This document shows, piece by piece, positions 1,427 to 57,117 of a stretch of 64,000 bases of DNA (the stretch's first letter is position 1; every line of letters begins with the position of its first letter). The DNA is from Haliotis rubra (Eukaryota). Under the pieces are notes generated by a model. The model saw only the letters and a program-made list of their open reading frames with translations, ran no database searches and was not told where the DNA came from. The translations under genes were made by a program, and so were the position numbers. Where the stretch lies: contig NW_025767435.1 in NCBI RefSeq assembly GCF_003918875.1, positions 2,046,001 to 2,110,000 on the forward strand, written 5' to 3'.

Positions 1427-4400
1427 CTTACAGCCGCCAGTGAAACCCGAGGAGAAGCCGGCGACGTATCTCATGATGCAGGGTGTGAGGTAGGCGTCGC
1501 ACAGGCTGCGGAGAGACACAGCTGGACATAAGCAGCATCAAGTTTCTGCATCAGTCTTGACACTGTGACATCCATACTGTCACAGATGTACATCTGGAGT
1601 GTCACTAACAAACTACAGGGAACTACAGATCATCTTTCCCCAGTCAATAAATGGTTATAGCTAATTTGATATCAGGTTGCTGTCGTGTGATATGAGCAAA
1701 ACATTGATAGGTCACTTCGTGAGATCAACAGGTTGAGGTTTGCGAACTTACAGACATAACCCTTACCTACAAACATACAATTTTATAATGGATAAAACTC
1801 AGAGGTTTTGGTCAAATTTGAGTGAAGCAGAGATCAAGGTTGTAAAACTGGAGGTTTTACCTTGAAGTTTTACTAGTCAGGGTCCCAATCCACAAAGCGT
1901 TCTTAGCGCTACGACATTCGTAAGCTTATGACAAACTATAGAGTTACGACAGGTCATAACGTTATGGACGTGTTGTGGACGTGGTCCCTAGTCACTGCTG
2001 CCTGAATGTTTTACTACGTCAAGCAAAACCATGGAGGATTGTTGAAACTGACTTAACCTTTCTTTGATGGGCATTTTAGAAGCTGAGTTGATGAAGAATG
2101 ATGACAATTATTATGGATGTACAATTTCTTTTAATTTACTGTGAAAGGCGACGTGTCGACATAGATTCTAATATCGTTGTCAAGCAAGTGACTTGACAAC
2201 GACATTATATTCTATGTCGAAACATCGCCTTTCACAATAAAAGAAACTGTATAACCATAAAAATTGTCATCATTCTTCTGACTTAACCTTGAAACATTCT
2301 TTTTATTATTGTTCAATACCATCCATAAACATACGTCATGAGGGTCTAAGGAATTGCTAGTAAAATATACCCATCCACGAAGTACAGATAAATACAGTTA
2401 CAACAATTGAGCAATATGCTTTAGCAATATTCCAGCAATATCACGGACAGGGACCACCAGAAATGGGCTTCACACATTGTACCCATGTTGGGGAACCAAA
2501 CCCGGGTTTTCGGCGTGACGAAAGCAAACACTTTAACCACTAGGCTCCCCACTGCCCCTCAGTTAAACAAAGTCATAAGGATCACTAAGTATAGTTCCTT
2601 GGAACCATTGTACGTCATACATATACTGAGATGTACAGCAAGTGGCGAAACAAGTCATGTCCAAAACAATTATGAACATCCATCATAACTTTATAATGTT
2701 TAAGATTGATTCATATTTGTTTGTCGCTTAACTATGCACTCTACCGATATCATTTTATGATAATTTCATCTGGGTATATGAGCAATATCTCACACAATCA
2801 GAATCAGTAACATGCTGTCGACAAACCAATCTGGTCACCTCTTATTGCAATTATGGACATTTATAACCCTAACACCTCACGATTATCTGAATGTTATAAT
2901 GTGTAGTAGTTTGTAGCTTGCTATTGCCTGACTGTTAACCTTGTTCTGTCTGAGATAAGTCAATATATTCACCCTGACGCCTCACGATTATCCGAATGTT
3001 ATAATGTGTAGTACTTTGTAGCTTGCTATTCCCTGACTGTTAAAGTTGTTCTGTCTGAGATAAGTCAATATATTCACCGGTAAATCCCCGCGGCACCATC
3101 CTCACCATCGGCATGACGTCCGAGGACAGAGATACATGGGTGAAACCCATCTCCTTGGCCAGCTGACCAACCTGTCTCTCATGGAGGTCACAGCTGAAGA
3201 ATATATACAACGCGAGTATAAACATAAATGTCCCGAAGACACAGACTTGAGAGAAACGTGTGTAAGAGTTTGAGGTAAAGCTGCAGTGGATCAGTCATAT
3301 TAACATGTATGGTCCTGACAAACCGTTAAAAATAACAAGGGGTCATCTGGATCTAAACCTACGATGCATGACTAAAGGAGGCAATACAGTACAGCAAATA
3401 GTGGCAACCTGACCAAATAGTAGCAACCTGGCCAACTGGGAAATATATGTCCCACCTGGTCCAAATTATTATTTGGTTTGTTCGTTGTTTAACGCCTCAC
3501 TCAGGCCAAACGAAAAAAAATGTTGTGGTTCCGATTACACCTCTTTAACATTTAGGGAAGGTAGGTAGGAATTCTTCTCTTTTTTAAACATTTTTTTTAG
3601 AAGTAAAGTTTGAACTAATAAAACATTTATCAATGTGTAATTGCTTATTCAATCAAGCTAGCGGCCATCATGTCGACTTTATTTATCAGAATGACCATTG
3701 TCCGAAAAAACAATGGTATCTGAAAGCTTTTTTTATGCATAACTCTAAAATATACTAGGGTCAGTACCAGAATTCAAGGGTCGGTCGGAACCACAACTTA
3801 TTTTTTTAGGCCTCAGCAATATTCCAGTTATATGGTGGCAGTCTGTAAATAATCGAGTCTGGATCAGACAATCCAGTGATCAACAGCATGAGCATCGATC
3901 TACGCAACTGGGATACGATGACGTGTGTCAACCAAGTCAGAGTGTCTGACCACCTGATCCCGTAATCACCTTTTTACGACAAGCATGGTTTGCAGAAGAC
4001 TAATTCTAACCTGGATCTTCTCTGGTCTCTCAAATTATGAGGATAACAGACTACATGTTAAATAGCTGCATGCATGAAAATGTTGACAGTTATTTTAGTT
4101 TTATGGAAATGAGGAGAATATTTATTTGTCGGGCAATTTGTCCTGATTTTAAGAAAGAGTTGTCTTTCTTTGCCTCAACTGTGCTCTCAAGTTCAAATTA
4201 GCATTCTGCTTATGAAAACAAAATAGAAACACAAAAGACACATGCTTTCATTTTATGATCATATTTTGTTGACAAGTTTGTTCACAGAGGCAATATTTAT
4301 TTATTCTCTAGCCCACTGAATCACACATCCACCCATCCACTCACTCACCGACTACAGCTACTCACGTGTAGGAGTGCGTGAACACTACGGCCAGACTCTT

Positions 4401-7400
4401 GATGCCCTTCTTCAGTAGTTCCTGGAGATCAGCCTTAAGTTTGTCCACATTCACCTCCTGCCAGATCTCCAGCTAATCAAGGATAAGTGACATTGAAGGA
4501 GAACTGAGTTCTATGGATAGTCAGCTTCTTTATTGCAATGAGCTACACATTTTGGTGTAGGTACTAACACTGTTATCACTTGCTTGATAACAGTGTTAGT
4601 ACCTACACTAAAACATCGCACTCATTGCAATAAAGAAGTTGACTTGGTTCTCCTTCACCTATACAACTTCTAAAATGCCTTCTCAAAGAAGTTAAGTGAC
4701 ATTGTTATTATCTTTGTTTGATGATTTCAAATCAATTCAAAATCTGCATGTACCAGACAAGGAGATTATCGTTGTGTTCACAATACTCCACATCACAGTA
4801 AGGTACATGTTCCCACTTGGTACCCATGTATGAAACCGAACACAGGTTTTGATGTGAAGAGAAAAAAAAATATCCACTAGCCTTCCTCACTGCTACTACT
4901 TCAAGTAAATGACGTAACAACATAGCAGAAAATAATATTCAGATATATGATGTCACCATAGGAGTGAGTGAGTTAAAATTTAGAGTCACATCCGCAATAT
5001 TGCAGCCATATCATGACTATTGTCAGCATAGGAAATGATAACGGACACAATTCCATTATTTGTATTTGACTCTGTCTACCGACCTGTTCACCTGTGGTTC
5101 CCATGACCTTCTGACATGACCTGTTGACCTGACACACGTCCTGCTGCAGGACCAGCCTCTCCTCCACCTCCACCACCTCCTCGTACAGCTTGTCGGGCAT
5201 CACGATTTTCTGAAGTCACATCAATCTCATCTTCACTCTGGACATCACAGTGACACATCATCACAACCAAACTTTCAACTTTCACTGACTTCAATGGTAA
5301 GATGATTCCGGAAAACAAGCCAATATCTGATCAAGCCTCTGTAGTCAACATGCTCATCTTCAAATTAAAGATCCAAGCTCATTACTGTGCAGAGAAAAAA
5401 CATCTTAACATATCCACTGTTTCAAAAAAAGATGCCACCCTGGGAGAAATTCACAATTTATCCATTTTCTGGTGCACATTACTCAATTAAATATGAAAGA
5501 AAGCCCTTAGTTTCAGGAGTCCATCTGAAGATTAATCAATATGTCTTCGTCATGTAAATAATTTGTTTCGGTGCCTCGTCAAATACATCCATAAAACTGT
5601 ATCACTAAAATGATCATCAGTTAAAACTGATTCTAATAATCGAAATGAAGATACAGTCAAATCCCGATGAGTCGAATCTCTGGGGACCAAGTAATACATT
5701 CGACTTATCGATGAATTCGAGACATAGGTATGTCTATGAGGGTAGAAAAAAAAACATGATCCAGTCCTAATTCCTCCACCTAAGCATTTGTTTACCTAAT
5801 GATTTCCCTATCACTAATAGGGGCACCTTATCAGTTCCAGTCTGATAGCACAGACAGTGACTTCCGTAAAATCACTAATCTGCCTTTTGAACTCACCCGT
5901 CAATGGCGGAAAGGTGTGAGCTGCGCTGGTTTGTTAATTGGATCAGTTTGCTACACCAATCAACTTCTCATTGACTGACTTCGGCTTATGTATACAAGAT
6001 TGCTGTTGTTTGAATCTCATGGGACCAAATTTCCTTCTCGAGTCATCGTGTGTATTTATGAGACGAATTCGTGTAACCGGTATTCAAATGATGACAACTA
6101 TAACAGGGAATGGTCGGGACCGACAGGTACTTCGAGTTATGCATAATATTCGAGACACCGGCATTCGGGCTCATCAGGATTTGACTGTATTACCATTTGA
6201 TCATTACTTTGTAATTGTAGTTCTGATATGACAATATTTCAATAGCTGCTTTGGATGTTTCTACGATTCTTAGAAAATAACACTGAAGACCACAAGTGAA
6301 ACTTGTCATCTTGAGATGGTATTTCCTGAAATTTACATGTTAAAGAGGTCATTCTCAACGCTGTCTCAAGTGACAGATAATTTTGATTAAGTAATTTGAG
6401 ACAAGGCTAGATTGTATGTATATATTCTGCAGTTAATTCTTAAACTTTTACACATAACCACAGACAATATATAATTTACCAGGTCAAATATGTGCGGCCT
6501 GGACTGGTTGCCGATATGGAGTAGATCTCTGAAACCCTTGGTGATGACGAGCGCCATCCTCTCTCCCTTCCTCTCCAGCAGGGCGTTGGTTGCCACCGTC
6601 GTCCCCATCCGGATCCAGTCTATCAGAGACGTGTCTATCGGGGAATCTGCTGGGCATGGCTTTCCTGTATACTGGAACATATTCATAACGGTAAACAACA
6701 TTGTTAACCTTTGGTAAAAACAATCAAATGTGTAATTCGATGTGTAATTGTCATCAGACACCTACAGCTGATATAGTGTTCCCCCTAGGCACATTAAGGA
6801 GGGCGCTACGCCCTGCCCTTTGATTTTTGCCCTTTTGTTTTTGCCCTGCCCTTTTCGCCTCAATCCCAGTTTTTTTTCCAGCTGAGCTTGATTTTACAAC
6901 AACCCGTGTGTATTTTCCGGATTTTATTAAGGACAGAGTTCTCTCCCTTTCTAAGGGAGACGCAAAATTGTTTTGATAATGATTAGAAATTGGTATTTAA
7001 ACCATGGCGAAGTCAAAGGTGTTTAATTCGCTTTACAAATCACAATGCCTACCAAGGAAAGAATCAAAAGGAAAAGAGAAGAAGCAGTGAAGGTTGAAGC
7101 AAGGAAGTGTCAGATGTCTGTATCTTTGATTTTTGACACCTGCAGCAATGGTTTTACACTTATGCTCCAGATATGAGCTCTACCCTCATTTTCAGTAAAA
7201 GTCCATTTGTCACCATAGAAAGAAACAACATAAGAAACCAGTCATCCGAAATTATCAAAAGGCATGACTTCACCATTAGACTGATTTGTGTAGCAAGTTT
7301 CAATTGTTAAGGGGTTCTGCTCACAAAACAGACAATGGACTGGCAGAAGGACAGCACACATTGATCAGTATATCCCTCTTTCATTCCAGCAACGGGGGAG

Positions 7401-8830
7401 GTGGGGTAGCCTAGTGGTTAAAGCGTTGGCTCACGCTGAAGACCCGGGTTCGATTCCCCACATGGGTACAATGTGTGAAGCCCATTTCTTGTGTCCCCTG
7501 CCGTGATATTGCTGGAATATTGCTAAAAGCGGCGTAAAACTAAAACTCAGTCAGTCAGTCATTCCAGCAACGTAACAAAAGGTGTTATCACAAGCACAGA
7601 TATGTACTGACTGCTTTAAAAGATCCTGATGATCTTAATCGAATATAATGCAGTCCATGTACACTCGTCATATGGAGAAACAAGCATGTCAAAAGTTCAG
7701 CTGCCCCCCGCCTGTCAGTTTTAGAGAAGAAAACATTTACAAGGTAAATATCCGCCTTGAAAGACTGCATGAGTATGATCAAAATAAGATCAGAGGTCGA
7801 TCAGAGAAATGTGTCCTACATTTGATGAATGCTATATTTCTTCTTCATTGAACAAGCAGATTTTACCATAGTTTCCCATTAATGTTCAATACTTTCCAAA
7901 ACCATAAATTTATCTGAATACAATGTATATGTATGGATTCATATAAAACACATTTTCTAACTGAAATTAATTTGAATGAGTCTTACAATTTCCATCCATC
8001 TGTTCATGCAATTTTTTATATAAACAAACCCAGCCTGGTTTGGTCCCTGAGTAGTAGTACAATGTGACATGACTATATTATCAGTATTTCTACATCAAAA
8101 CACTGGACAGCTGTAGAAACAGCATTTATCCATCCAATTACACTGCTCATTAACCTAGTGATGTTTCACGTTCCATCACATAAGTTACAGCTTGTTTGGG
8201 AATTGTGGAAGTGACAGCTGGTTTATTCATAATAATTTTGTGTATACAAAAATGTATAAAGAGAAGACGAAAAATAAATACGTTTTTCCTGGTAGAATTA
8301 ACCACAGCTGAGTTTTGTGACAGTTCGTGGAGTTACAAAGTAGATACGTTGAGCCCCAACTGTACACAAAGAAGTGATCATATTCAAAGACACCTATATA
8401 ACCTTAAATGGGCCCCTTCAGATTCATTCACTTTCTGTATCCAGGATAACGCATTCAGCCTACGACTCAAAGAATGACGTGTATATACATTTGGACATAT
8501 GCGATGTTCTCCAATCTATTAAGTAGATTCATACAAATGCCATACATAAATTTCTCTTAACCAAATGAGCTAAACGTCTATATCGAGATATTTTAACATT
8601 CCGGTGCATATCCCTAAACGAGCCTCAATAAGTTTTTGGAGGATAATCACCTCTTCCAGAATGCGCCTGATGCCTTCCCTGGGTGCGTCATCGTAATTGG
8701 CGGGGTCCTCCGACAACAACTTCAACACCCGAATCTCATTATTCGGACATCGGGCCCATACGTCGGTGAAGGTGCCCCCACGATCGATGGCAAATTGGAA
8801 CGGTGACGACATTGACACTTTGTCAGCCAT
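1427..8830 (-). CDS. OPLAH: 5-oxoprolinase (ATP-hydrolysing), N-terminal six coding exons; the gene continues beyond the left edge
   Basis: Exons 8830-8651, 6671-6480, 5209-5084, 4472-4366, 3193-3078 and 1505-1427, all bounded by GT-AG. Hydantoinase/oxoprolinase motifs [71 protein letters not shown] and DAYLTP. Exon 6 is 1 nt short of frame (see findings). Confidence 0.95.
1880..1990. mobile_element. Degenerate palindromic MITE (GGTCCC-type termini)
   Basis: Imperfect inverted arms. The internal CTTAGCGCTA/CGTAAG motifs are shared with the elements at 31.14 kb and 44.05 kb. Confidence 0.45.
2048..2290. mobile_element. Fold-back Penelope-like insertion with hammerhead-type arms, copy 1 (OPLAH intron 5)
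   Basis: TSD CTGACTTAACCTT at 2048-2060 and 2278-2290. Inverted arms of about 90 bp meet at TCAAGCAAGTGA. Tail CTTCTAAAATGCCCATCAAAGA lies on the minus strand at the left. The plus arm reads TTGACAA-C-GACAT...ATGTC-GAAA-CATC-GCC...AATAAA. Confidence 0.8.
3503..3812. mobile_element. AGGCC-terminated MITE nested in the tail of a SINE-B copy
   Basis: AGGCCAAAC...TTGTGGTTCCGA and TCGGAACCACAA...TTTAGGCCT form inverted ends that interrupt the SINE tail at CACTC|...|CAGCAATATTCCAG. Confidence 0.55.
4484..4704. mobile_element. Fold-back Penelope-like insertion, copy 2 (OPLAH intron 3, next to the exon-4 acceptor)
   Basis: TSD TAAGTGACATTG at 4484-4495 and 4693-4704. Inverted arms, with tail AACTTCTAAAATGCCTTCTCAAAGA at the right. 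The arm reads TGC-TTGATAA-C-AGTGT...ACACT-AAAA-CATC-GCA...AATAAA (G12 mutated). Confidence 0.8.
5654..6187. mobile_element. Tc1/mariner-type MITE, about 530 bp
   Basis: TA|CAGTCAAATCCCGATGAG ... CTCATCAGGATTTGACTG|TA. A second, one-end-truncated copy lies inverted at 44741-45244. Confidence 0.8.
7394..7561 (+). mobile_element. tRNA-derived SINE family A
   Basis: A-box-like TAGCCTAGTGG, B-box GGTTCGATTCC, body CACATGGGTACAATGTGTGAAGCCC, tail GCTGGAATATTGCTAAAAGCGGCGTAAAAC plus (CTCA)n. Other copies lie at about 2418-2558(-), 10150-10290(+), 22938-23097(-), 27193-27290(-), 28569-28739(-), 30853-31014(-), 39202-39372(-), 40925-41057(-), 42420-42560(-) and 56240-56320(+). Confidence 0.9.
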
Positions 8831-10657
8831 TTTGCCAAGTACTAAGTGTGGTTATCTCCCCTGATTCAGATTCAGATTCAGTGTAAGTAACTGAAACATA
8901 TGTCACGCGTTCAAAGGCTCCGAGCACGAACTCGGCTGATGAGACATGTTCAACACGTGTCAGGAACGTATTGTGAATGTCAAATAACAATAATGAATGC
9001 ATAAATATTGTACACACATGTTTGAGAATTTGTTTGCAAGAGAATAGGAATGCAGTGTTCATTACGTATACAGGTATTTTATGTGAATGCATATAACATT
9101 AGGAAAGGGATAAAGGATATAAATGTCATTGTTTGATTGGCATTCTAAAGGTTGATGAGTAAATAATCAACCATACAACTTTATGTCACAACCAGGTCCA
9201 AAATTAGATTCTCTCAGATGCAATGTCCTGCTTTCTGAAGGTGAAATGATTACATTTATGTAATCTCTAACTTTGTATAAATTTTATTTTTGCCTGCTAC
9301 GTTTAACCACATTTTTTTCATGTGTTTTTAAAAAAATTCTTTGTTCAAAATTGTAGCATCTGTGCATAATGTTCTGAACAAAACTTTATAAATATGTTTC
9401 GACATATCTGTATATATGCAAAACAACTGTTTTGTTCAGTTTAAGTATTAATATACAATAGTTGTATTATTAAATTCATTTGACAGTTCAGATATTGCAC
9501 GTGGAATTTTCATCATATAGATGATATCTTCGGGTTTGTTCAAAATTACTCACTCAATCAGTTTACTCATTGCAACTTAACAAGATAAGTCAGTCAGAAA
9601 GATTGATATAATTTGTGATCAACTATGAAATTAACACATTTACAGTTCCAAGAAAATATCAAAAATGATTTTGTCTCCATTATACACTTTTAGCTGTGTT
9701 TGAATTTCCTCCAGTCTGTCTTCCTAGAGTAGATACCTATAGTGCATGGACTTGGTATCACATGTGTTGCCACACCAATTAGACGTTCCTTTTTAAAGTC
9801 AAGTCTTTTGTTCGTTTAATTATTAGGAATTGCACAATATGCCTTCAGTTTATAGGGTTCTGGGCAGTGGATGTCATTGCCCTGTATTCCTTATTTTATT
9901 TATTAATGCTTTTTGTAATAATATGTAATTAGGTGTATCATTCTGGTCAGATGGGCTGCCCGCCATCATTAATTGAGGTGTGGATTTCAGGGCTGCGGTG
10001 AGGGTATGTGACATTAAAAAAAGTGTTATATCAATACTTTGATGTACAAAAAATAATCTGTGAAAAAAATCTTGGGGGCAGTTGGCCCCTTGGGCTACCT
10101 ACGGCCCTGACGACGATGTAGTTTTTACGTTACTCTTGCTTCTTATGGATGTGGGGTAGCCTTGTAGTTAAGGCGTTCGCTCGTCACACCGAAGACTAAG
10201 GTTCGATTCCCCACGTAGGTACAATTTGAAGCCCACATCTTCATATTGCTGGAATATTGCTAAAAGCGGCGTAAAACTAAACTCACTCTCAATGACGTAA
10301 GAATCTATCAAAACATCGCCGAATGCGAGATAGATAAACTGTTATCCACCAAGATGTTTTTATCGGTATTATGGTCATAAAGTTCAGAAACGTGTGGGTA
10401 TTTTATCTGACGTTTCATTGCTTCCTTTGGCAATAACATGCAATGAATGATTGTGACCAACTCACCTACTCCGTTTTTCACCACAACATAACCAACATAT
10501 AGGGCAACGCAGATATCACGAAAACTGAGCACTATTGACCGTCTACTTTCCCGTGTGTTGTCATTACAGAACAAGTTAACCCGTAATGATCCGGGATAAA
10601 ATTGGTCTAAAGCAACTCGTGTATGTATGTCGTTAAACGCTTGTGTTTGTCTTGTAC

Positions 10658-10863
10658 CAGTGTATGTATAAGTCAAAAACCCAGCCAGACATCTGGGCTG
10701 GTAACTTAAAAAACTTTCCAGCCCAGAAGAGATTTAACCAGTCCTTCTTAAACACCAAATAGACAGTGCCAGTGGATACGTTATTTGAATATTTTTTTCA
10801 CCCGTCCATCGGGCTGGCTAGCTGTAAAATTACACCGTCGGACGGGCCTTATTTTATACACTG
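10658..10863. mobile_element. MITE with CAGTGTAT...ATACACTG termini
   Basis: Terminal inverted repeats flanked by the direct repeat CTTGTAC. A related partial copy lies at about 47630-47827. Confidence 0.65.
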
Positions 10864-11146
10864 CTTGTACAGACTCAATTATTTTCAGACGACCGTCATA
10901 TACCGTATAGCTTGAAAACATATATAGCTTAGCAACAAACAAACAAAAGCATGACAAATTAATAATTCAAATAGAAATCTCTCACCATAGCAATTTCTCT
11001 AATGCGACACCCTTATTATCGTTAGACTGGCAAATAAGCGTAACAAAAGTCTAGGCAATAGAGTTCTCAAATCTTGTGAAAGATTTTCAGTTTTTGCCGA
11101 AAATGTAGTGATTATCATCGTTAGTGCTTCACATGCATCGTGGGAC

Positions 11147-11396
11147 TGCACTACGTTCGTAAGAAAGGTATGATACTTTACGGGTGACAACTTCTTTGTC
11201 ATAAGATGATGCGACGTTTCGGTGTATAGGTTCTTATACCGTTGTCAAGAGTGAAATGGCTTGCTTGACAACGCTATAACAACACGTACCGAAACGTCGC
11301 ATCATAGTATTATAAAGAAGTTGTCACCCGTAAAGTATAATACCTTTCTTATTATTCGTTAACTTCTGAAATGCCAATAAACGGTGCACTACGTTC
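11147..11396. mobile_element. Fold-back Penelope-like insertion, copy 3 (OPLAH-EXOSC4 intergenic region)
   Basis: TSD TGCACTACGTTC at 11147-11158 and 11385-11396. Inverted arms of about 90 bp, with tail AACTTCTGAAATGCC. Both arms keep TTGACAA...GAAACGTCGCA. Confidence 0.85.
11262..11301 (+). ncRNA. Putative minimal type I hammerhead ribozyme motif (U3-A8 variant)
   Basis: TGC-TTGACAA-C-GCTA(loop)TACC-GAAA-CGTC-GCA. Stem I is UGC/GCA, the core is UUGANAA and GAAA, stem III is the palindrome ACGU and the cleavage triplet is GUC. Stem II has one mismatch. Confidence 0.6.
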
Positions 11397-13275
11397 CTTC
11401 ATAATGCTGCGTTTATACACTAGGCCACGATTATGCCGATCGGACGCGAACTACAATCCGTTTGATTTCATTTGTGACCTATGAATTGCTATCTAATAAC
11501 TGCAACAAAACCAAATTTGGCACAGTCACATGAAATCGACAGACCAACTCTGATGATTTGTCTCACAATTTTGGACACCCGAATAAATATGTAGTTTAAC
11601 GAACGATCATTATTTTGTTGACGCTTTTCGCATTTTTNNNNNNNNNNNNNNNNNNNNNNNNNNNNNNNNNNNNNNNNNNNNNNNNNNNNNNNNNNNNNNN
11701 NNNNNNNNNNNNNNNNNNNNNNNNNNNNNNNNNNNNNNNNNNNNNNNNNNNNNNNNNNNNNNNNNNNNNNNNNNNNNNNNNNNNNNNNNNNNNNNNNNNN
11801 NNNNNNNNNNNNNNNNNNNNNNNNNNNNNNNNNNNNNNNNNNNNNNNNNNNNNNNNNNNNNNNNNNNNNNNNNNNNNNNNNNNNNNTGGGTGTGCGAGTT
11901 GCACGTGTGAAGTTGAAATTTCACTACACATGCTGGTTGATTACCTGGCTTTTCTACACATTTTTACGTTTGGATATCTGATCATATACGCTTCAATGAA
12001 GATCTGCTGCGAATATTTGACGATCTGTAGCTAGCGACTTTTTACGATCATCACGGCGATTAAACACGATTGTGACACGATTTTCGGACAGCATGAGTTA
12101 CTTTGGAGCCCTTTCCTTTCTTCATATTTTACAATGAAAATGACGATAACATAGTGTGATAGGGCTTGCAGTTGGATCACTATGAATTTCCTCTGGCAGC
12201 GTGACACAATTTATAGGAAATCACACCAACGCACCAGAACGTGTCGCAGCACACAAGGAAGCGTAAAGAGATGGTGAAACATCGTGGACGTTAATGGTAG
12301 TACGGCGTGTTAAAACGTTCATAGAAATGCATTTAATCGTATTAGATCGAGATAGGTTGTGAACAACATGACACAGGGCAGGAGATTTTAATATAATCGA
12401 AATAGATTGTAATATATTGTAATAGATCTTTGTAGAATCGCAATAAATCTTGGTAGAATAGTGGGACAATGGGAACTAACATCTGATACTCGTTATTACA
12501 ATGTATTACGATCATCCGGACACGCCCCATGGCGCTTTTTCACGCTCTTATTCGATTTGTTCCGATGCCCTCACTCTACTATACGTGGTACTTCGTTCTG
12601 AAACGATAGCTAAGAAAATCGGCACGATCGTAGCAAAATATTAAACATGTTTAATATTTTAATAGATTAAACATTTTAATAGATTAAAATATTAAACATG
12701 TTTAATATTTTGCCAAGATTATAAAGAATTTAATGTTGAATTCATTGGTGAATGTGAACGTCATTTTGCGTGTCTTACACGATTCAAGGTCAATACCAAG
12801 CGTAACCTCACTGTGAGTGTATGACAGTCAGCACTCTCCTCCTCATACCCCCTGTCAGCCTCCTGATCCTCTGAAGGAGCACTCTACGCCATTCCTCGTG
12901 TAAAGCAATTTCCAATTGGACCAGGTTCTTTTAAGGAAGATCCCTTTGTTGCACACGACGAGCAATGTCCCAGATATGCTCCAAAGGTTAAGGTCGGGGC
13001 TCATTCAATCGTGAGATATGTAACTAAGTTCTTTGTGTGCATTTTGGATTACACTTTCTCAGTAAGAACAGTATAACAGTAGGTTAGCATTACCATTTTG
13101 AAGATTACTGAAGATCACATATCAACAACTGAATGTATGATTATCACACTTATATTATTACTATTATTACTACATATTGATAAACATATAATAAAACATA
13201 TTATATATATATATATTAGTTTGCATGTTGTTATTTGAATTATATCTATGGCCCTTTTGACTTTCCCTTGGCCCT

Positions 13276-13440
13276 GGGGCGGTGTGGTAACCTTGTGGTT
13301 AAAGCGTTCGCTCGTCACGCTGAAGACCCGGGTTCGATTCCCCACATGGGTACATTGTGTGAAGCCCGATTCTGGTGTCCCCCGCCGTGATATTGCTGGA
13401 ATATTGCTAAAAGCGGCGTAAAACCAAACTCACTCACTCT
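13276..13440 (+). mobile_element. tRNA-derived SINE family A (near-consensus copy upstream of EXOSC4)
   Basis: Full head, body and tail. An extra tail fragment lies at 13511-13550. Confidence 0.9.
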
Positions 13441-13822
13441 TGCCTAACTGTGAAGATGATGTTGTTATTAGGTGGTTCATGACTGTTCATTCTCCGGCTG
13501 CATCTTTGTATTGCTAAAAGCGGCGTAAAACCAAACTCACTCACTCACTCCCTTGGCGCTTTTGACTTTTCCAGTTTTTGCCCTTTTGACCTGTTCCCGA
13601 TCAGGATATCGAAAAGAAATATTTGAATTTGTCCGAATCGGACTGGAACTGAATGATATTGAAAAATCTTCCAAAATGGAGCAATATCATTTGCAGGGAC
13701 AGGCCGTGAGTAACATGAGAATGGATATTGGGATTGGGTACAATTGAAGCGTACGTACAATCATAAATCCAAAGAAGGGGAAGTCACTCTAAACGAATGA
13801 ACGGGCACATGTTCATAACAAC

Positions 13823-16800
13823 ATGGCGGGCTTAGAACTTCTGTCTGATCAGGGCTTTCGAATTGATGGGCGTAGACCCCATGAACTACGGAAGATCCAG
13901 TGTCGTCTAGGGGTTTTCAAGCAAGCGGACGGTTCAGCGTATATTGAGCAAGGAAACACGAAGGTTCTGGCAACAGTATACGGACCGCATGAGGTAAACC
14001 CAGCTTCAGGATCCACGAATACTGTGACAATTGACGTTGTGGTACATGCAAATTATACAAAGCTACTTTTCACAGCGGACTTATCGTTCCTCATACAAAC
14101 TGTTGAGACAAGTGGAGTGTTATCAAGTTTTGGCGTTCAGATTCCATAGCCAAACATTGACCCTACAATCTCCACAACACTGATTTCACAATGTCCTGTC
14201 AAAATAGTGACACTTAATTGTCAACGAATGATTCTTTTCAAATTCTACTTGAAAACTTTTGTAAATAGTTACACATAAGATATGTGATATGTATCTTAAA
14301 TTTCATATATTAAGCAGAAACCTTCAAATGTGAATGAATAATGTGTTTTTTGAGAGGCATTTTAGAAGTTGTGAAGATGAAGGAAAACTAAGTTCTATTG
14401 ATAGTCAACTTCTTTATTGCAATGAGTGCAACATTTCGGTGTAGGTACTAACATCATTATCAAGCAAGTGAAAAAAAAGTTCTATGGATAGTCAACTTCT
14501 TTATTGCAATGAGTGCAACATTTCGGTGTAGGTACTAACATCATTATCAAGCAAGTGAAAAAAAGTTCTATTGATAATCAACTTCTTTATTGCAATGAGT
14601 GCAACATTTCGGTGTAGGTACTAACATCATTATCAAGCAAGTGAAAAAAAGTTCTATGGATAATCAACTTCTTTATTGCAATGAGTGCAACATTTCATGT
14701 ATACTAACACCGTATCAAGCAAGTGAAAAAAAAGTTCTATGGATAATCAACTTCTTTATTGCAATGAGTGCAACATTTCGGTGTAGGTACTAACATCATT
14801 ATCAAGCAAGTGAAAAAAAGTTCTATGGATAATCAACTTCTTTATTGCAATGAGTGCAACATTTCGCTGTAGGTACTAACATCATTATCAAGCAAGTGAA
14901 AAAAAGTTCTATGGATAATCAACTTCTTTATTGCAATGAGTGCAACATTTCGGTGTAGGTACTAACACCGTTATCAAGCAAGTGAAAACTAAGTTCTATG
15001 GATAGTCAACTTCTTTATTGCAATGAGTGCAACATTTCGGTGTAGGTACTAACATCATTATCAAGCAAGTGAAAACTAAGTTCTATGGATAGTCAACTTC
15101 TTTATTGCAATGAGTGCGATGTTTCGGTGTAGGTACTAACACTGTTATCAAGCAAGTTATTATCACTTGCTTGATAATGCTGTTAGTACCTACACCGAAA
15201 TGTTGCACTCATTGCAATAAAGAAGTAGACTGTCCATAGAACTTAGTTTTTCTTCATGAATAATGTGGTCTAGCATGACATGATTATAACAACAAACAAA
15301 ATCACTATCATATGTTCTATTGCAGATCAGAGGTAGCAGAGGAAGAGCCTTACATGACAAGGTTCTGGTTAACTGTCAGTACAGCATGGCGACATTCAGC
15401 ACAGGGGAGAGGAAAACACGCCCACGCGGTGACCGCAAGTCTCAAGAGATGACCATGCACCTCAGACAGACCTTTGATGCAGCTATTATGACTAGCCTCT
15501 ACCCTCGATCACAGATTGATATATTTGTTGAGGTAAGACAACACTATTCCTTTGTTTGGGAATCTGAGTTACCAGAGTCAAAGTTTGCAGTCAAATAATG
15601 CAATTTACATTTGTGATTTACAAAGCAGAACAAGCCGAAAAATAAGGTTTTGAATTAAATGTGACAAAAACAAGAAAATAAACAATTAAAAAAAATAATG
15701 AGGTATCACCTGATTACAATTTAGAATGGTGTCCTCCCATTACGCAGACAACCAGTTCGCAGACACCTTAAAACAACAACATTTACGGTTCAGTGAACAG
15801 ATTATCTACTACCTGTTACCTACACATTATAATGGAATAGTCCAAATAAAAACACAGGAACAAACTGAAGCTATATTATTTATTTTGAAAGATGGACGAA
15901 AAGACAGTAATTTGAATTTTCATTGCTGCAATATAAAAACAGTTAGTTTTCATAAACATTTCTGTTTAACCTTCTAGTCGGCATCATCATATTGAAAACA
16001 TTAGCTTAGCTATTAGGAATTGCGACACTGTTGTATCATATAAATCAAATAAAGTGAAATGTGAACCTAAATATTATTCATATGGAATAAAGAAGTTATA
16101 TGTTTTGCACACAATATTAAGATATATGACGAGTGCACTTAATTACGATTTATTTAGAATAAATATTCAAAATATGACGCATCATGACAATGTGGCTATT
16201 ACTTCCTTGAATGACCATTGTATACTACTCAAAGACATAAACTGTTACAATCTTTAGAAAGTATCGCTTAAAATTAGAACACTGATTGGTATTATTCAGA
16301 TCTTACATGGCAATGCAGGTGTCTCATTTACTGCCTAAAATTTGAGAAGAGAAATCATTTATCATTTAATCACAACAAAGTTCTATTTACTCACAATCAA
16401 ACTTCTCAGTAGCGAACCTGTTTCAGGCTCACCCTGCTCTACTCACTAGACAGCGGACTGTTCCATTGTACTCTTGGTATTACCCTAATTAACCTTCTAG
16501 TTTAGTGTCTGTCAACTGGCTGTCTGTCAAATGGGAGATAACCTTTAGAATACATTAATGATGCATATTGTTTTTTTTCAAACTGTTGCTTTGTGTGTTT
16601 GTTGTTTAACACCACACTAAGTAACATTCCAGGGTTATGATGGTGCAAACCGAAAGAATTCCTATGAGACTTCTTAAAAGAAAATTGGTTTACAGATTTG
16701 AACAAATATGAAAAATAAATGACTTTTGAACACCAAACCAAAGAGGTTACAGTTGGGTATATTTACAAGACAATCGTAACTATCATAGTGGAGATGGTGA

Positions 16801-17545: not shown

Positions 17546-17906
17546 TGAGGTGAGGTGAGGTGAAATTAGGTTTAACGTCCTGCTTGAGAATGTTTCGCTC
17601 ATATGACGACGTGCATGCGTGTGTATGTGTATGTGCAGCTGCTTGTACTAGCCCAGACTTAAGCTGGTTTTATAGTGCTAGCCCACTGAGATACCATGCC
17701 GCAGTGAAACATGAATACCCCACTCAGACACATTATACTGACTCCGAGCCGACCAGTCCTTGTTGTATGCATAAATGCCGAGCCCCAGGCAGGGACCAAC
17801 AAGTACCATATTTTAACGTCTTTTGGTATGACGCGGTCGGGGATCGAACCCGCGACCTTCCGCTCTCCGGGCGGACGCTGTAACCACTACACCACGGAGG
17901 CGGTCT
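17546..17906 (-). mobile_element. tRNA-derived SINE family C (about 360 bp), nested in an older SINE-B copy
   Basis: Head GGTGTAGTGG...GGTTCGATCCC, central domain CCTGCCTGG-GCTCGGCATT...GGACTGGTCGGCTCGGAGTCAGTATAATGTG (possibly a Meta-SINE-type domain), and (CCTCA)n tail. SINE-B sequence resumes on both sides. Confidence 0.88.
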
Positions 17907-18806: not shown

Positions 18807-19170
18807 GAGACCGCCTCCGTGGTGTAGTGGTTAGAGCGTCCGCCTGGAGAGCTGAAGGTCGCGGGTTCGATCCCCGACCGCGTCATACCAAAAGACGTTA
18901 AAATATGGTACTTGTTGGTCCCTGCCTGGCGCTCGGCATTAATGGGTACAACAAGGACTGGTCGGCTCGGAGTCAGTATAATGTGTCTGAGTGGGGTATT
19001 CATGCTTCACTGCGGCATGGTATCTCAGTGGGCTAGCACTATAAAACCAGCTTAAGTCTGGGCTAGTACAAGCAGCTGCACATACACATACACACGCATG
19101 CACGTCGTCATATGAGCGAAATATTCTCAAGCACGACGTAAAACCCAATTTCACCTCACCTCACCTCACC
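18807..19170 (+). mobile_element. tRNA-derived SINE family C
   Basis: Near-identical inverted partner of 17546-17906. Further copies lie at about 34288-34570 and 52303-52651. Confidence 0.88.
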
Positions 19171-52651: not shown

Positions 52652-53527
52652 TACAACAAACGTGGGTTGCTGGAGACCAATTATACCCATCATGTGGTCC
52701 AACAAAAGAACTATAGAATCAACAATATCCATGATGGATTTATTGCAACAAACCAACTTTGACATATATGAGCCTTGTTAAAATATATTTCTTGGTTTAA
52801 AGGGCCTGATACCTTTAGATTTACCCACATCCCAGATATTGTTTGAGTGTCTTAACAGTGAAACAAAAGAATGTTCCAAATCTCTTATCATTCACGCCTT
52901 TCCCAGTGAGAATTCCAAACGAACCAGGGCTGTATCAAGACATGCACAGTGACCAACATTTGGCCCCATGTCTGAAACAAATGTCAGTAAAAATTCAGAA
53001 ATAGGAATGAAAAATTCCTCAATTATGTTTATATGGTCATATGTCATAGTATTGTTGTAGCTTGGTGATAACATGTTTACCACTGATAACAGGACTAGTG
53101 GTGAGAGCGAGTCTTCCAGGCTTAGTTTTACATTTTATATTATCGCCACAAAAAGGTGCAAAGTTGCTGATGGGGTGTTAAGCAGTATTCACTCACTCGC
53201 ACATCTACATTATTGCATTGAATGCAGGGTAAAATAGCCACTAAAATTTCCAACATAATCACAACATAATAAATTCTCTTTTTACCAAATTTGCCTGACA
53301 TGTTCAGATCGGACACGTTTGGAATCATAGATAAATCCCTGGTGGGAAGCCCTTGTCTCGGGTCCAGGTCTTTACATTTAGTCCCTGGTAGCATTCTCCA
53401 AAATACATGAAATATTACCATACATCCACTCAGTAATGATGTAATTTGGAACATGATGTGTATACAATCCTACCCAAGACACTCTCGTACATGGACATGA
53501 GGGAGTGAGTAAGGATGATGGATGGAT

Positions 53528-53720
53528 TGGAGGGAGTCTGTGAAGAGGTTGTAGGAGGGTCGGAGGAAGTCTGTGAAGAGGTTGTAGGAGGGTCGGAGGA
53601 AGTCTGTGAAGAGGTTGTAGGAGGGTTGGAGGGAGTCTGTGAAAAGGAGGTATGAGGGTTGGAAGGAGTCTGTGAAGAGGTTGTAGGAGGGTTGGAGGGA
53701 GTCTGTGAAGAGGTTGTAGG
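53528..53720. repeat. 33-bp minisatellite (GGAGGRAGTCTGTGAAGAGGTTGTAGGAGGGTY), about 6 copies
   Basis: Read directly from the sequence. Confidence 0.88.
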
Positions 53721-53929
53721 AAAAAAAGTCATAGATTGGGTAGGAAAATAAGAATCACAGAAAATATGAGAGGGGAGAAAGAGAGACATAAAACACTTTT
53801 GGAGAGTCGTGAAAAATGGGGGATAATGTGTGTTTTTTATTTTGTCTTTTCAGGGCCATGGCAAAGGGTCAGGGAGGGTGTAACAAAATTCTGACAAGCA
53901 TTTGTGGAGGTCATAGAACATTTTGAAAG

Positions 53930-55891
53930 GCATTAGGGGAGGGTCATACAAAACTATGACGGGCATTAGAGGAGGGTCATACAAAACTATGACAAGCATT
54001 AGAGGAGGGTCATACAAAACTATGACAGACATTAGGGGAGGGTCATACAATACTATGACAGGTATTAGGGGAGGGTCATACAAAACTATGACAGGCAATA
54101 GGGGAGGGTCATACAAAACTATGACAGGTATTAGGGGAGGGTCATACAAAACTATGACATGTATTAGGGGAGGGTCATACAAAACTATGACAGGCAATAG
54201 GGGAGGGTCATACAAAACTATGACAGGTATTAGGGGAGGGTCATACAAAACTATGACAGGTATCGGGAGGGTCATACAAAACTATGACAGGCAAAAGGGG
54301 AGGGTCATACAAAACTATGAGAGACAATAGGGGAGGGTCATACAAAACTGTAAGAGGCAATAGGGGAGGGTCATACAAAACTATGACAGGTATGGGGAGG
54401 GTCATACAAAACTATGACAGGTATCGGGAGGGTCATACAAAACTATGACAGACAATATGGGAGAGTCATACAAAACTTAGACATTAGGGAAGGGTGATAC
54501 AAAACTATGACAGGGGAGGGTCATACAAAACTATAGGGAAGGGTCATACCAAACTATGAGAGACAATATGGGAGGGTCATACAATACTATAAGAGACAAT
54601 ATGGGAGGGTCATACAAAACTATGACAGGTATTAGGGAGGGTCATACAAAACTATGACAGGCAATAGGGGAGGGTCATACAATACTATGACAGGTATTAG
54701 GGAGGGTCATTCCAAACTATGAGAGACAATATGGGAGGGTCATACAAAATTATGAGAGACAATATGGGAGGGTCATACAAAACTATGACAGATATTAGGG
54801 AAGGGTGATACAAAACTATGACATGTATCGGGAGGGTTATACCAAACTATGAGAGACAATATGGGAGGGTCATACCAAACTATGAGAGACAATATGGGAG
54901 GGTCATACAAAACTATGACAGGTATTAGGGAGGGTCATACAATACTATGACATGTATTAGGGAGGGTCATTCCAAACTATGAGAGACAATATCAGAGGGT
55001 CATACAAAACTATGACAGGTATAAGGGAAGGGTCATTCCAAACTATGACAGGTATGGGGAGGGTCATACAAAACTATGACATGTATTAGGGAGGGTCATA
55101 CAAAACTATGAGAGACAATAGGGCAGGGTCACACAAACTATGACAGGCAATAGGGAAGGGTCATACAAAACTATGACAGGTATGAGGGAGGGTCATACAA
55201 ACCTATGACAGGCAATAGGGGAGGGTCATACAAAACTATGACAGGCAATAGGGGAGGGTCATACAAAACTATGACAGGTATGGGGAGGGTCATACAAAAC
55301 TATGACAGGTATGGGGAGGGTCATACAACACTATGACATGTATTAGGGAGGGTCATACAAAACTATGACATGTATTAGGGAAAGTCATACAAAACTATGA
55401 CAGGCAATAAGGGAGGGTCATACAAAACTATGATAGGTATTAGGGGAGAGTCATACAAAACTGAGAGACAATAGGGCAGGGTCACACAAACTATGACAGG
55501 CAATAGGGAAGGGTCATACAAAACTATGATAGGTATTAGGGGAGTGTCATACAAAACTATGACTGGCAAAAGGGGAGGGTCATACAAACCTATGACAGAC
55601 ATTAGGGAAGGGTCATACAAAGGTATGACAGACATTAGGGGAGGGTCATACAAAACTATTACAGGCAAAAGGGGAAGGTCATACAAACCTATGACAGACA
55701 TTAGGGAAGGGTCATACAAAACTATGACAGGCATTAGGGAAGGGTCATTCAAAAGTATGACAGACATTAGGGGAGGGTCATACAAAACTATTACAGGCAA
55801 AAGGGGAGGGTCATACAAACCTATGACAGGCATTAGGGGAGGGTCATACAAAAGTATGACAGGCGTCAGGGGAAGGTCATACCAAACTATG
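53930..55891. repeat. 32-33 bp minisatellite (GGGGAGGGTCATACAAAACTATGACAGGYATTA), about 60 copies
   Basis: Read directly. Each unit contains the inverted repeat GTCATA/TATGAC. Confidence 0.95.
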
Positions 55892-56456
55892 AAAAGGATT
55901 AGAGAGAAGAGGTTCATTTTTAGTAAAATAGGGCACCAAACAGCACGGACTATGATACCTGTCTACAAAATGACCGGTCCCTCATACAAGAGAAACCTTA
56001 GAACCAGACCAGGAAGTGGACTGGTATTGTCACCAGTGTGCGTGAGGTCGTCAGACTCTTGTTTTCCATTGCCAGATAGATCGGTAACTTAATTACTCCA
56101 TCCAAGCTGAATGAGTTTGAAATTGGTTTTGTGGGAATTTATGTATATTGTTTCAGGATGTACCTCGCGACATTCAAGATATATGACAGTTTGTGGATCT
56201 TGGCAAAGGTAGCAACGTCTGGCTCGGTCGGTGATGTCGAGGCGGTGGGGTAGCCTAGTGGTTAAAGAGTTCGCTCGTCACGCCGAACACCCGGGTTTGA
56301 TTTCCCACAGGAGTACAGTGTATGGGTATGATCACGCATGCGTACCGTCACTGGTTTGCCTGAGCGAGATTCGATAACTTACAGGCAGTCGTGATATAGA
56401 TTGAACAACCCTTATGCGGCGCCATTCACTCATTCACTTTACTTCACAGAGCTCTT

Positions 56457-56696
56457 GTGAAGGTCTGGGTTAGAATTGGTCTTCAGTAACCCATGCTTGT
56501 CGTAAGAGGCGACTAACGGGATCATGTGGTCAGGCTCGCTGACTTGGTTGACACATGCCATCGTATCCCAGTTGCGTAGGTTGGTGCTCATGCTGTTGGT
56601 CACTGGATTGTCTGGTCCAGGATCGATTATTTACAGACCGCCACCACATAGCTGGAATATTGCTGAGTGCAGCGTAAAACTAAACTCTCTCACTCA
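56457..56696 (+). mobile_element. SINE-like family B
   Basis: Near full-length copy whose CTCA tail runs directly into the second minisatellite array. Confidence 0.88.
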
Positions 56697-57117
56697 TACA
56701 AAACTATGACAGGCATTTAGGGGAGGGTCATACAAAACTATGACAGGCATTAGGGGAGGGTCATACAAAACTATGACAGGCATTAGGGGAGGGTCATACA
56801 AAACTATGACAGGCATTAGGGAGGGTCATACAAAACTATGACAGGCATTAGGGGAGGGTCATACAAAAGTATGACAGGCATTAGGGAAGGGTCATACAAA
56901 ACTATGACAGGCATTAGTGGACGGTCATACAAAATTATGACAGGCATTAGGGGAGGGTCATACAAAACTATGACAGACATTAGGGGAGGGTCATACAAAA
57001 CTATGACAGGCATTAGTGGACGGTCATACAAAATTATGACAGGCATTAGGGAAGGGTCATACAAAACTATGACAGACATTAGGGGAGGGTCATACAAAAC
57101 TATGACAGGCATTAGGG
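56694..57117. repeat. Second array of the 33-bp GGGTCATACAAAACTATGAC minisatellite, about 13 copies
   Basis: Read directly from the sequence. Confidence 0.95.

What the first reader, a model, noticed from the sequence alone, without database searches (positions are those of the whole stretch)
2048..15267. Family of tiny fold-back retro-insertions: inverted arms, a one-sided shared tail and 12-13 bp TSDs
Seen: four insertions (2048-2290, 4484-4704, 11147-11396, 14334-15267) share one architecture although their arm sequences differ. Two arms of about 90 bp join head-to-head near TCACTTGC/GCAAGTGA. One arm is extended by an unpaired tail CTTCTRAAATGCC (followed by ..TCAAA in three copies). Each insertion is flanked by its own 12-13 bp direct repeat (CTGACTTAACCTT, TAAGTGACATTG, TGCACTACGTTC, ATGAATAATGTG). 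Known: Penelope-like elements (PLEs) insert with inverted, truncated pseudo-LTRs and a tail, whereas MITE TIRs abut short fixed-length TSDs symmetrically. Inference: these look like MITEs but are non-autonomous or severely truncated PLE-type retro-insertions of at least three subfamilies. Four copies in 13 kb imply high genome-wide abundance.
Basis: partly seen in the sequence, partly recalled or inferred. Interest (0 to 1): 0.88.

Follow-up and report, generated by a model that had tools for sequence, protein, structure and literature searches.

The report
Tiny Penelope-type fold-back retro-insertions
The four small hairpin-shaped insertions are real copies of a very abundant, non-coding jumping element of this abalone genome. 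Their scars match those left by Penelope-like retrotransposons, so they are a good new example of a published kind and not a new kind.

Summary
The N gap (11638-11886) touches none of them.

Genome-wide:
- The tail 13-mer occurs 5,330 times against 45 for a reversed control.
- 30 of 37 other fold-back copies have flanking repeats of 8-17 bp (mode 13). A swapped-flank control gave 0 of 37.

The basic unit is about 131 nt. It has a hammerhead-like core of the published Penelope "minimal" type (U3-A8 variant), a spacer and a roughly 35-nt tail.

The fold-back looks made at insertion:
- The hinge differs between copies.
- Either arm can be truncated independently.
- 13 of 31 junctions use a 4-nt microhomology.
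- Both arms carry the same source variants (19 mirrored substitutions against about 1 expected).
- The inverted arm ends at one fixed site, about 35 nt before the other arm's end.

A true autonomous Penelope-like family in this genome shows the same two alternative 3' ends and one-sided tails.

Earlier notes of this scan describe the same kind of element elsewhere in this genome. Verdict: new member of a known kind.

The parts
2048..2060 (.). el.1 target-site duplication, left copy (13 bp)
   Evidence: Exact repeat of 2278-2290.
2061..2092 (-). el.1 unpaired tail (32 nt; the 3' end of the element, sense on the minus strand)
   Evidence: Holds the tail motif at 2070-2082. It has no partner in the other arm.
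2093..2191 (-). el.1 direct unit: unit start plus hammerhead-like core, then spacer
   Evidence: Arms I8 and I10. Alignment to the other units.
2192..2277 (+). el.1 inverted arm (the same unit read on the plus strand, without tail)
   Evidence: core box at 2193-2227 on the plus strand.
2278..2290 (.). el.1 target-site duplication, right copy
4484..4495 (.). el.2 target-site duplication, left copy (12 bp)
   Evidence: Exact repeat of 4693-4704.
4496..4580 (-). el.2 inverted arm, inner end truncated at unit position 11
   Evidence: I7. Alignment to the unit consensus gives inverted arm 11-95 with a 4-nt overlap.
4581..4655 (+). el.2 direct unit (carries an internal deletion relative to the family consensus)
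4656..4692 (+). el.2 tail (37 nt)
   Evidence: Tail motif at 4667-4679; unpaired.
4693..4704 (.). el.2 target-site duplication, right copy
11147..11158 (.). el.3 target-site duplication, left copy (12 bp)
   Evidence: Exact repeat of 11385-11396.
11159..11256 (-). el.3 inverted arm plus hinge
   Evidence: I6. Core box at 11212-11248 on the minus strand.
11257..11351 (+). el.3 direct unit
   Evidence: Core box at 11265-11299 on the plus strand. Alignment.
11352..11384 (+). el.3 tail (33 nt, G variant of the motif)
   Evidence: Motif at 11363-11375.
11385..11396 (.). el.3 target-site duplication, right copy
14334..14345 (.). el.4 target-site duplication, left copy (12 bp)
   Evidence: Exact repeat of 15256-15267.
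14346..14378 (-). el.4 tail (33 nt)
   Evidence: Motif at 14356-14368.
14379..15160 (-). el.4 head-to-tail array of about nine direct units (86-bp period, each with the core boxes, none with a tail)
   Evidence: TRF: 8.9 copies, 94% matches, plus a 255-bp higher-order period. Nine core-box matches on the minus strand.
15162..15255 (+). el.4 single inverted arm
   Evidence: I1-I5. Core box at 15171-15205 on the plus strand.
15256..15267 (.). el.4 target-site duplication, right copy
11638..11886 (.). Assembly gap (N); not part of any element
   Evidence: The nearest element boundaries are 11396 and 14334.

Best explanation
These are copies of a non-autonomous retroelement family with at least three subfamilies and thousands of copies. 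It is mobilised by the reverse transcriptase/endonuclease of a Penelope-like element (PLE).

The transposing unit is a short RNA of about 131 nt; a young subfamily has about 55 nt more at the 5' end. It runs in this order:
- a conserved start
- a minimal hammerhead-like core of the PLE type (U3-A8 variant, one unpaired base before helix II, G10.1-C11.1, GAAAC, a palindromic ACGU in place of helix III, cleavage site GUC)
- a spacer of about 50 nt
- a tail of about 35 nt

Inferred mechanism: the endonuclease makes a staggered break, giving the 12-15 bp duplication. Each of the two DNA ends then primes a cDNA on this RNA. One cDNA starts at the far end of the tail (site B). The other starts about 35 nt further in (site A).

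The two cDNAs run towards the RNA's 5' end and are joined head-to-head, often through a 4-nt microhomology. The product is a fold-back with a tail on one side only.

When only one cDNA is made, the result is a solo unit. Template jumps give head-to-tail arrays such as el.4.

Shown here: the anatomy, the TSDs, the two end sites, the variable junctions and the common origin of both arms. Inferred: the enzyme, the order of events and any ribozyme activity.
For: Abundance:
- The tail 13-mer occurs 5,330 times in the genome against 45 for the reversed control.
- There are 1,753 and 1,349 first-look candidates for two subfamilies.

Flanking repeats:
- 30 of 37 fold-back copies have TSDs of 8-17 bp, mode 13. 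A swapped-flank control gave 0 of 37.
- The 3' end varies over about 8 nt.

The two ends:
- The inverted arm's outer end always falls at unit positions 91-95, and the direct arm ends at 124-131.

The hinge:
- It is not inherited. There are many junction types with fillers.
- Either arm can be full-length while the other is cut back by 10-95 nt (L062, L071, L085).
- 13 of 31 junctions overlap by the 4 nt ATCA/TGAT.

Common origin of the arms:
- 19 mirrored non-CpG substitutions against 1.0 expected, P about 5e-18.

Other architectures:
- In a tail-selected sample, 17 of 27 independent insertions carry an inverted piece. The rest are solo, tandem or other bodies sharing only the tail.

Conservation:
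- The blocks shared between subfamilies are the two catalytic boxes and the tail.
- Helix II differs by three compensatory pairs between el.1 and the el.2/el.4 family.

Internal control:
- An autonomous GIY-YIG PLE family of this genome has two alternative 3' ends 42 nt apart.
- Its head-to-head pairs carry the tail on one arm only.

Literature:
- The PLE signature is an inverted 5'-truncated copy, a one-sided 30-40 bp tail and a TSD (PMC8557442, PMC3846280).
- A PLE protein cleaves and extends both DNA strands and starts reverse transcription at two sites that bracket the tail (PMC11167929).
- Minimal hammerheads, including U3-A8, occur in PLE repeats, often as opposed pairs 100-700 bp apart (PMC4209133).
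Against: - No autonomous PLE carrying this tail or unit was found. There was no tail within 1.5 kb of 30 GIY-YIG loci. Thirty copies share no extension beyond the 3' end. No PLE-like coding sequence lies beside 60 copies. None of the 100 listed tail places lies near a GIY-YIG place.
- Those 30 GIY-YIG loci are nearly all one family that targets (TA)n, so it is not the partner. Other families could not be fetched.
- Rfam hammerhead models do not match, even at E up to 10. Single decayed units show no folding signal.
- At least two copies (L071, L080) carry tail sequence on both sides, so the asymmetry is a strong rule and not absolute.
- Two copies (L068, L087) share one unusual junction. I explain it by a CAATTG microhomology, because 38 of 40 relatives lack that junction. 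Inheritance of a whole fold-back is not excluded for some lineages.
Confidence: 0.78

Rival explanations
1. A SINE-like element mobilised by a LINE. The inverted arm would arise by twin priming, as in L1 5' inversions.
For: TSDs of 10-17 bp, 5' truncation and a slightly variable 3' end fit any target-primed reverse transcription. No PLE partner was found. Other element bodies share only the tail, as in SINE/LINE pairs (L070, L077).
Against: - There is no poly(A) or microsatellite 3' end.
- There is no tRNA, 5S or 7SL head.
- L1-type twin priming inverts a neighbouring segment and does not duplicate the same one. Here both arms copy the same 90 nt.
- The second fixed end site 35 nt inside, the head-to-tail joins at that same site, and the PLE-type hammerhead boxes are PLE hallmarks. 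They are also seen in this genome's own PLE.
Confidence: 0.1
2. They are solo pseudo-LTR pairs, meaning extreme 5' truncations of an autonomous PLE, and not a dedicated non-autonomous family.
For: PLE insertions are often heavily 5'-truncated, and solo pLTRs are known (PMC3846280, PMC8557442). The tail contains an ATG in good context, as where a PLE ORF starts inside its pLTR.
Against: Direct units start at a discrete position (unit 1-4, or the discrete start of the 55-nt extension) and not along a continuum. None of about 60 copies runs further 5' or 3' into coding sequence.
Confidence: 0.08
3. A MITE: a deletion derivative of a cut-and-paste DNA transposon with terminal inverted repeats.
For: Small size and inverted arms. 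Rfam gives sub-threshold miRNA-hairpin matches, as MITEs often do.
Against: - TSD length varies from 8 to 17 bp.
- One end has a 35-nt unpaired tail.
- The arms meet in the middle with no internal region.
- 10 of 27 tail-selected insertions have no inverted arm at all, and at least one of these (L065) still has a TSD.
- No transposase was found.
- A real MITE in the same window (about 3497-3816) has conventional short terminal inverted repeats, for contrast.
Confidence: 0.02
4. The hairpin itself is the selected, inherited unit (for example a hairpin RNA or small-RNA source), and copies propagate as whole fold-backs.
For: The consensus is a perfect palindrome. Arms share variants. L068 and L087 share a junction.
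Against: Hinges differ in nearly every copy, arms are truncated independently, and many copies lack the second arm. Thirty-eight of 40 relatives of L087 lack its junction. All miRNA matches are far below Rfam gathering scores.
Confidence: 0.04

Closest known systems
Penelope-like element insertions (pseudo-LTR, inverted 5'-truncated copy, one-sided 30-40 bp tail; Evgen'ev & Arkhipova; PMC3846280, PMC8557442, PMC11167929)
   Same: Head-to-head inverted copies with a palindromic or microhomology junction. Head-to-tail partial tandems. A 32-37 nt tail on one side. Variable TSDs. Two discrete 3' end sites. The same pattern occurs in this genome's own GIY-YIG PLE.
   Different: There is no ORF; the whole element is about 130-220 bp. 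No autonomous relative with the same terminal sequence was found. There is no microsatellite target preference, unlike the abundant (TA)n-targeting PLE here.
Minimal hammerhead ribozymes of metazoan PLEs (Cervera & De la Pena 2014, PMC4209133)
   Same: Catalytic boxes with the documented U3-A8 covariation. An unpaired base between positions 9 and 10.1. A G10.1-C11.1 pair and a long helix II. A palindromic 15.2-16.2 (ACGU) with no helix III. Thousands of dispersed copies, often as opposed pairs.
   Different: Activity is untested. Helix I is only about 3 bp. Rfam covariance models do not detect it.
Animal non-LTR retrozymes (PMC7229834; bioRxiv 10.64898/2026.07.22.740005)
   Same: Non-coding, hammerhead-bearing, tandem-forming elements thought to borrow PLE enzymes. 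el.4 is such a tandem array.
   Different: Retrozyme monomers are 170-400 nt with canonical type I hammerheads, and they are expressed as circular RNAs. Here the array unit is 86 nt with a minimal core, and no RNA data could be obtained.
L1 twin-priming 5' inversions
   Same: Two DNA ends prime on RNA and the cDNAs are joined through microhomology.
   Different: Twin priming inverts an adjacent segment. Here both arms copy the same segment from two fixed start sites.

Membership tests
Penelope-like element (insertion signature) | One-sided 30-40 bp tail: two alternative 3' ends | tested here: met
   The inverted arm ends at unit positions 91-95 and the direct arm at 124-131, in about 30 copies and all four window copies. 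Tails are 32-37 nt.
Penelope-like element (insertion signature) | Adjacent inverted 5'-truncated copy (head-to-head) and/or head-to-tail partial tandem | tested here: met
   17 of 27 tail-selected insertions carry an inverted piece. Tandems occur in L063, L064/L084 and el.4.
Penelope-like element (insertion signature) | Target-site duplication of variable length | tested here: met
   8-17 bp, mode 13, in 30 of 37 copies; the control gave 0 of 37.
Penelope-like element | Related long copies encoding RT plus GIY-YIG endonuclease with the same terminal repeat | tested here: inconclusive
   Not found in 30 GIY-YIG loci, beside 60 element copies, or by co-location of places.
Minimal hammerhead of PLEs | Catalytic boxes CUGANGA (or U3-A8 variant) and GAAA, extra base before helix II, G10.1-C11.1, palindromic 15.2-16.2, H17 | tested here: met
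   A pattern for these boxes matches 12 times in the window against 0.05 expected. The features were read and compared with PMC4209133.
Minimal hammerhead of PLEs | Helix II kept by compensatory changes between families | tested here: inconclusive
   There are three double changes between el.1 and the el.2/el.4 family. Only three subfamilies are in hand, and el.3 needs a bulge.
Hammerhead ribozyme (Rfam models) | Match to a curated hammerhead covariance model | tested here: not met
   No hammerhead family matched at E up to 1 in 20 kb, or at E up to 10 in 1 kb.
Hammerhead ribozyme | Self-cleavage | not testable with these tools
The only footprints are weak: a few arm ends and repeat joins fall at or near the predicted site (L002, L072, L083).
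MITE / DNA transposon | Terminal inverted repeats abutting a fixed-length TSD on both sides | tested here: not met
   TSD length is variable, one end is an unpaired tail, and solo units lack inverted repeats.
SINE mobilised by a LINE | Pol III-type head and a poly(A) or microsatellite 3' end | tested here: not met
   There is no tRNA-like head inside the elements. The 3' ends are not repetitive.
Non-LTR retrozyme | Tandem monomers of 170-400 nt with a canonical type I hammerhead, expressed as circular RNA | tested here: not met
   The array unit is 86 nt with a minimal core. Expression could not be tested.
microRNA precursor | Match at or above the Rfam gathering score | tested here: not met
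   Best scores are 68.6 against 119, and 40 against 75. These are generic hairpin matches.

The most novel reading that the evidence does not exclude
These thousands of mini-insertions are a natural record of how Penelope-like elements integrate. Each fold-back would be two cDNAs primed on the two ends of one staggered break, obeying a near-strict rule: one end uses the outer start site and the other the inner one. Both would copy the same RNA species, possibly a hammerhead-mediated RNA dimer, and would be joined by a 4-nt microhomology. That would be in vivo confirmation, at scale, of the two-strand, two-start-site behaviour seen so far only in vitro for one lizard element.
Probability: 0.45. 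Interest if true: 0.55.

Novelty: new member of a known kind. Interest (0 to 1): 0.36.

Why it matters
Penelope-like elements are poorly annotated, and their short derivatives are easily mislabelled as MITEs or hairpin RNA genes. This family exceeds 5,000 copies, lies in introns and close to splice sites, and has a young subfamily at 96-99% identity. It gives a clean, countable set of insertion junctions that agrees with the recent in vitro model of PLE integration. For genome annotation of abalone and other molluscs, it shows that 'fold-back plus one-sided tail plus 12-15 bp TSD' should be read as a retro-insertion. It does not reveal a new class of element.

Tried and rejected
- **Partner search.** I scanned 30 GIY-YIG loci for the tail and unit and found nothing. 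I looked for a common extension beyond the longest 3' end in 30 copies and found none. A tblastn with a PLE ORF against all element loci and the window gave nothing. I compared the listed tail places with the 140 GIY-YIG places by eye and saw no co-location.
- **Empty sites.** A 3-kb query spanning el.1 and el.2 found no second locus or haplotig.
- **Rfam.** There were no hammerhead hits, and the miRNA hits are sub-threshold hairpin matches.
- **Folding.** Thermodynamic folding of single units gave no signal, with z-scores from -0.8 to +1.1.
- **Snap-back self-priming of a single cDNA.** Rejected, because it predicts the same end on both arms and symmetric truncation. The ends differ (sites A and B) and the truncations are independent.
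- **The abundant (TA)n-targeting PLE as partner.** Rejected, because these TSDs are not microsatellites.
- **Earlier-findings look-ups.** Searches by sequence and by combined words were blank.


Full report
**1. Observation**

Each insertion is bounded by an exact direct repeat:
- el.1: 2048-2060 and 2278-2290 (13 bp)
- el.2: 4484-4495 and 4693-4704 (12 bp)
- el.3: 11147-11158 and 11385-11396 (12 bp)
- el.4: 14334-14345 and 15256-15267 (12 bp)

Further checks:
- The repeat finder recovers the inverted arms at 85-96% complementarity.
- The motif CTTCTRAAATGCC occurs four times in the 64-kb window, once per element and on one side only. About 0.17 matches are expected by chance.
- el.4 is 910 bp because one arm is a head-to-tail array of about nine 86-bp units, followed by a single inverted arm.
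- The N gap at 11638-11886 lies between el.3 and el.4 and touches neither. All evidence is local to each element, so continuity across the gap does not matter here, and I did not try to fill it.

Two details need correcting:
- The unpaired tail is 32-37 nt; the quoted 13-mer lies inside it.
- The arms of the three subfamilies do share three conserved blocks.

**2. Genome-wide reality**

Earlier notes of this scan call the window's assembly (1.38 Gb, 2,855 contigs) an abalone. The family is abundant in it:
- Two of the window copies gave 1,753 and 1,349 first-look candidates.
- The exact tail 13-mer occurs 5,330 times, against 45 for the reversed control.
- Four tails in 13 kb is therefore a local cluster, about 80 times the mean density, within an abundant family.

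I analysed 60 tail-bearing copies with 1.5-kb flanks: 4 in the window and 56 in loci L001-L030 and L061-L090.
- Thirty of 37 fold-back copies have flanking direct repeats of 8-17 bp. The distribution is 13 bp x12, 12 x4, 15 x4, 14 x3, and others once or twice.
- Pairing each left flank with another copy's right flank gave 0 of 37.
- The 3' end varies over about 8 nt.
- Target sites are not microsatellites and show only weak base preferences.

Variable TSD length and a ragged 3' end fit target-primed reverse transcription, not a DDE transposase.

**3. Anatomy of the unit**

An alignment of the el.2/el.4 family gives a consensus that is a perfect palindrome plus a tail. Read with the tail at the 3' end, the basic unit is 131 nt:

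| Unit positions | Content |
|---|---|
| 1-9 | Conserved start |
| 10-16 | TTGAYAA box |
| 17 | One extra base |
| 18-35 | Stem-loop |
| 36-43 | GAAAC GTC |
| 44 to about 92 | Spacer |
| about 93-128 | Tail |

- Across the three subfamilies, the conserved blocks are the two boxes, a short A-rich block and the tail. The stem-loop differs.
- Between el.1 and the el.2/el.4 family, three stem pairs change on both sides and stay paired.
- These features match the published 'minimal hammerhead' of metazoan PLEs. That motif has an unpaired base between positions 9 and 10.1, a G10.1-C11.1 pair, a long helix II, a palindromic 15.2-16.2 with no helix III so it would act as a dimer, and a documented U3-A8 covariation. 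It occurs in thousands of dispersed copies, often as opposed pairs 100-700 bp apart (PMC4209133).
- Rfam's hammerhead models do not detect the motif, and single decayed units show no folding signal.
- So the motif-level test is met, the curated-model test is not, and activity is untested.

**4. The fold-back is made at insertion**

- *Variable hinge.* The hinge differs between copies, with different truncation points and fillers such as GCC.
- *Independent truncation.* Either arm can be full-length while the other is cut back. In L062 the inverted arm is complete and the direct unit starts at position 71. In L071 and L085 the direct arm is the tail alone. In L007, L014 and L021 the inverted arm is the short one.
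- *Microhomology.* Thirteen of 31 junctions overlap by the same 4 nt. Unit positions 1-4 (ATCA) are complementary to positions 11-14. This class occurs with either arm full-length.
- *Shared source.* The two arms of a copy share source variants. At non-CpG sites there are 19 mirrored substitutions against 1.0 expected (P about 5e-18), beside 62 and 61 one-arm changes. Subfamily-diagnostic sites are usually mirrored.
- *Different outer ends.* The inverted arm always stops at unit 91-95 (site A), abutting the TSD. The direct arm runs on to 124-131 (site B).
- *Tandem joins.* Head-to-tail joins (L063, the el.4 array) also use site A.

A single cDNA snapping back on itself would give equal ends and symmetric truncation, so I reject that model. 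Two cDNAs primed separately on the two ends of one staggered break, then joined head-to-head, fits all six points.

This also matches what a purified PLE protein does in vitro. It cleaves and extends both strands and starts reverse transcription at two sites that bracket the genomic tail (PMC11167929).

Exceptions:
- L071 and L080 have tail sequence on both sides.
- L068 and L087 share one junction. Thirty-eight of 40 relatives lack it, and it sits on a CAATTG microhomology.

**5. Other architectures**

In the sample selected only by the tail (L061-L090, 27 independent events):
- 17 carry an inverted piece.
- 10 do not. These are solo units (L065 has an 11-bp TSD), 5'-truncated units, tandems, and two unrelated bodies that share only the last 30-45 nt (L070, L077).

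The tail is therefore a portable 3' module. A young subfamily (96-99% identity, 449-658 candidates) has a 55-nt 5' extension with its own discrete start.

No copy runs on into coding sequence at either end. This favours a dedicated non-autonomous element over random truncations of a long one.

**6. Internal control**

The GIY-YIG search found at least 140 matches.
- The 30 loci I could read are nearly all one autonomous PLE family.
- That family inserts into (TA)n and has two alternative 3' ends 42 nt apart, with about 11 long and 14 short among the copies read.
- Two head-to-head pairs (L039, L055; 99% identical arms) carry the long end on one arm and the short end on the other.

So a real PLE of this genome shows the same layout as the tiny elements. 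It is not their partner, because the terminal sequences and the target preference differ.

**7. What is missing**

No RT + GIY-YIG element with this tail was found. A LINE partner therefore cannot be formally excluded. I give it about 0.1.

**8. Context**

- el.1 and el.2 lie in introns of a 5-oxoprolinase-like gene on the minus strand.
- el.3 lies between that gene and EXOSC4.
- el.4 lies in EXOSC4 intron 1, about 58 nt before exon 2.

**9. Comparison and verdict**

The elements work like, and by every testable structural criterion are, PLE-type retro-insertions carrying the PLE minimal hammerhead motif. The closest relatives in kind are the dispersed min-hammerhead copies of Cervera and De la Pena, and animal non-LTR retrozymes.

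Earlier notes of this scan (s1-320423, s1-320418) describe the same kind of fold-back mini-element on other pieces of this genome, and my independent analysis agrees with them.

What this report adds:
- junction statistics supporting two-sided priming with two start sites
- the same-source test for the arms
- the internal PLE control

Novelty: new member of a known kind. Interest is moderate to low.

Noticed in passing
L031-L060 (for example L044:1-3261, L055:1394-2419): An abundant autonomous GIY-YIG PLE family inserts into (TA)n microsatellites. It has two alternative 3' ends 42 nt apart, and head-to-head pairs with 99% identical arms carry the long end on one side only.
   Followed up: partly
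L087:1590-1682 (minus strand), also L068 and L081: A young subfamily (96-99% identity, 449-658 first-look candidates) carries a 55-nt 5' extension. The extension holds a TATATAT stretch about 30 nt before the usual unit start, so it may be a promoter.
   Followed up: partly
L070:1497-1600 and L077 (minus strands): Unrelated element bodies end in the same last 30-45 nt of the tail, so the tail acts as a shared 3' module. ARAGORN finds no tRNA in these loci.
   Followed up: partly
L083, L079, L064/L084 (upstream of the direct units): Short tandem arrays built from pieces of the hammerhead-like core. There are 36-nt units spanning unit positions 8-43 that join exactly after the predicted GUC site, about 30-nt units from the helix II region, and repeats of unit positions 1-42.
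   Followed up: partly
window 4473-4496: The body of el.2 begins about 22 nt from the apparent splice acceptor of a 5-oxoprolinase-like exon on the minus strand. The element's end now supplies part of the pyrimidine-rich stretch before the acceptor AG.
   Followed up: no
window 3497-3816: A conventional MITE-like repeat with short terminal inverted repeats and a very large family (12,568 first-look candidates for the 3-kb query, nearly all scored hits on this stretch). It is a useful contrast to the fold-back elements. A SINE-like repeat adjoins it at about 3812-4026.
   Followed up: no
window 17829-17901 (-) and 18813-18885 (+): Two tRNA-like matches just below the Rfam gathering score (24.8 and 25.8 against 29 bits). 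They may be heads of the tRNA-derived SINEs that other notes report in this genome. ARAGORN calls no tRNA there.
   Followed up: no
window 12627-12719: An AT-rich perfect-looking hairpin (45-nt arms, 91% complementary) unrelated to the family.
   Followed up: no
window 53527-57117 and 1-291: Long 33-bp minisatellite arrays (up to 63 copies), and a 26/52/79-bp G-rich tandem array at the window start.
   Followed up: no
window 14390-15157: The el.4 array has a 255-bp (three-unit) higher-order period, and most units share a T-run junction variant. Part of the array probably grew by local duplication after insertion.
   Followed up: partly
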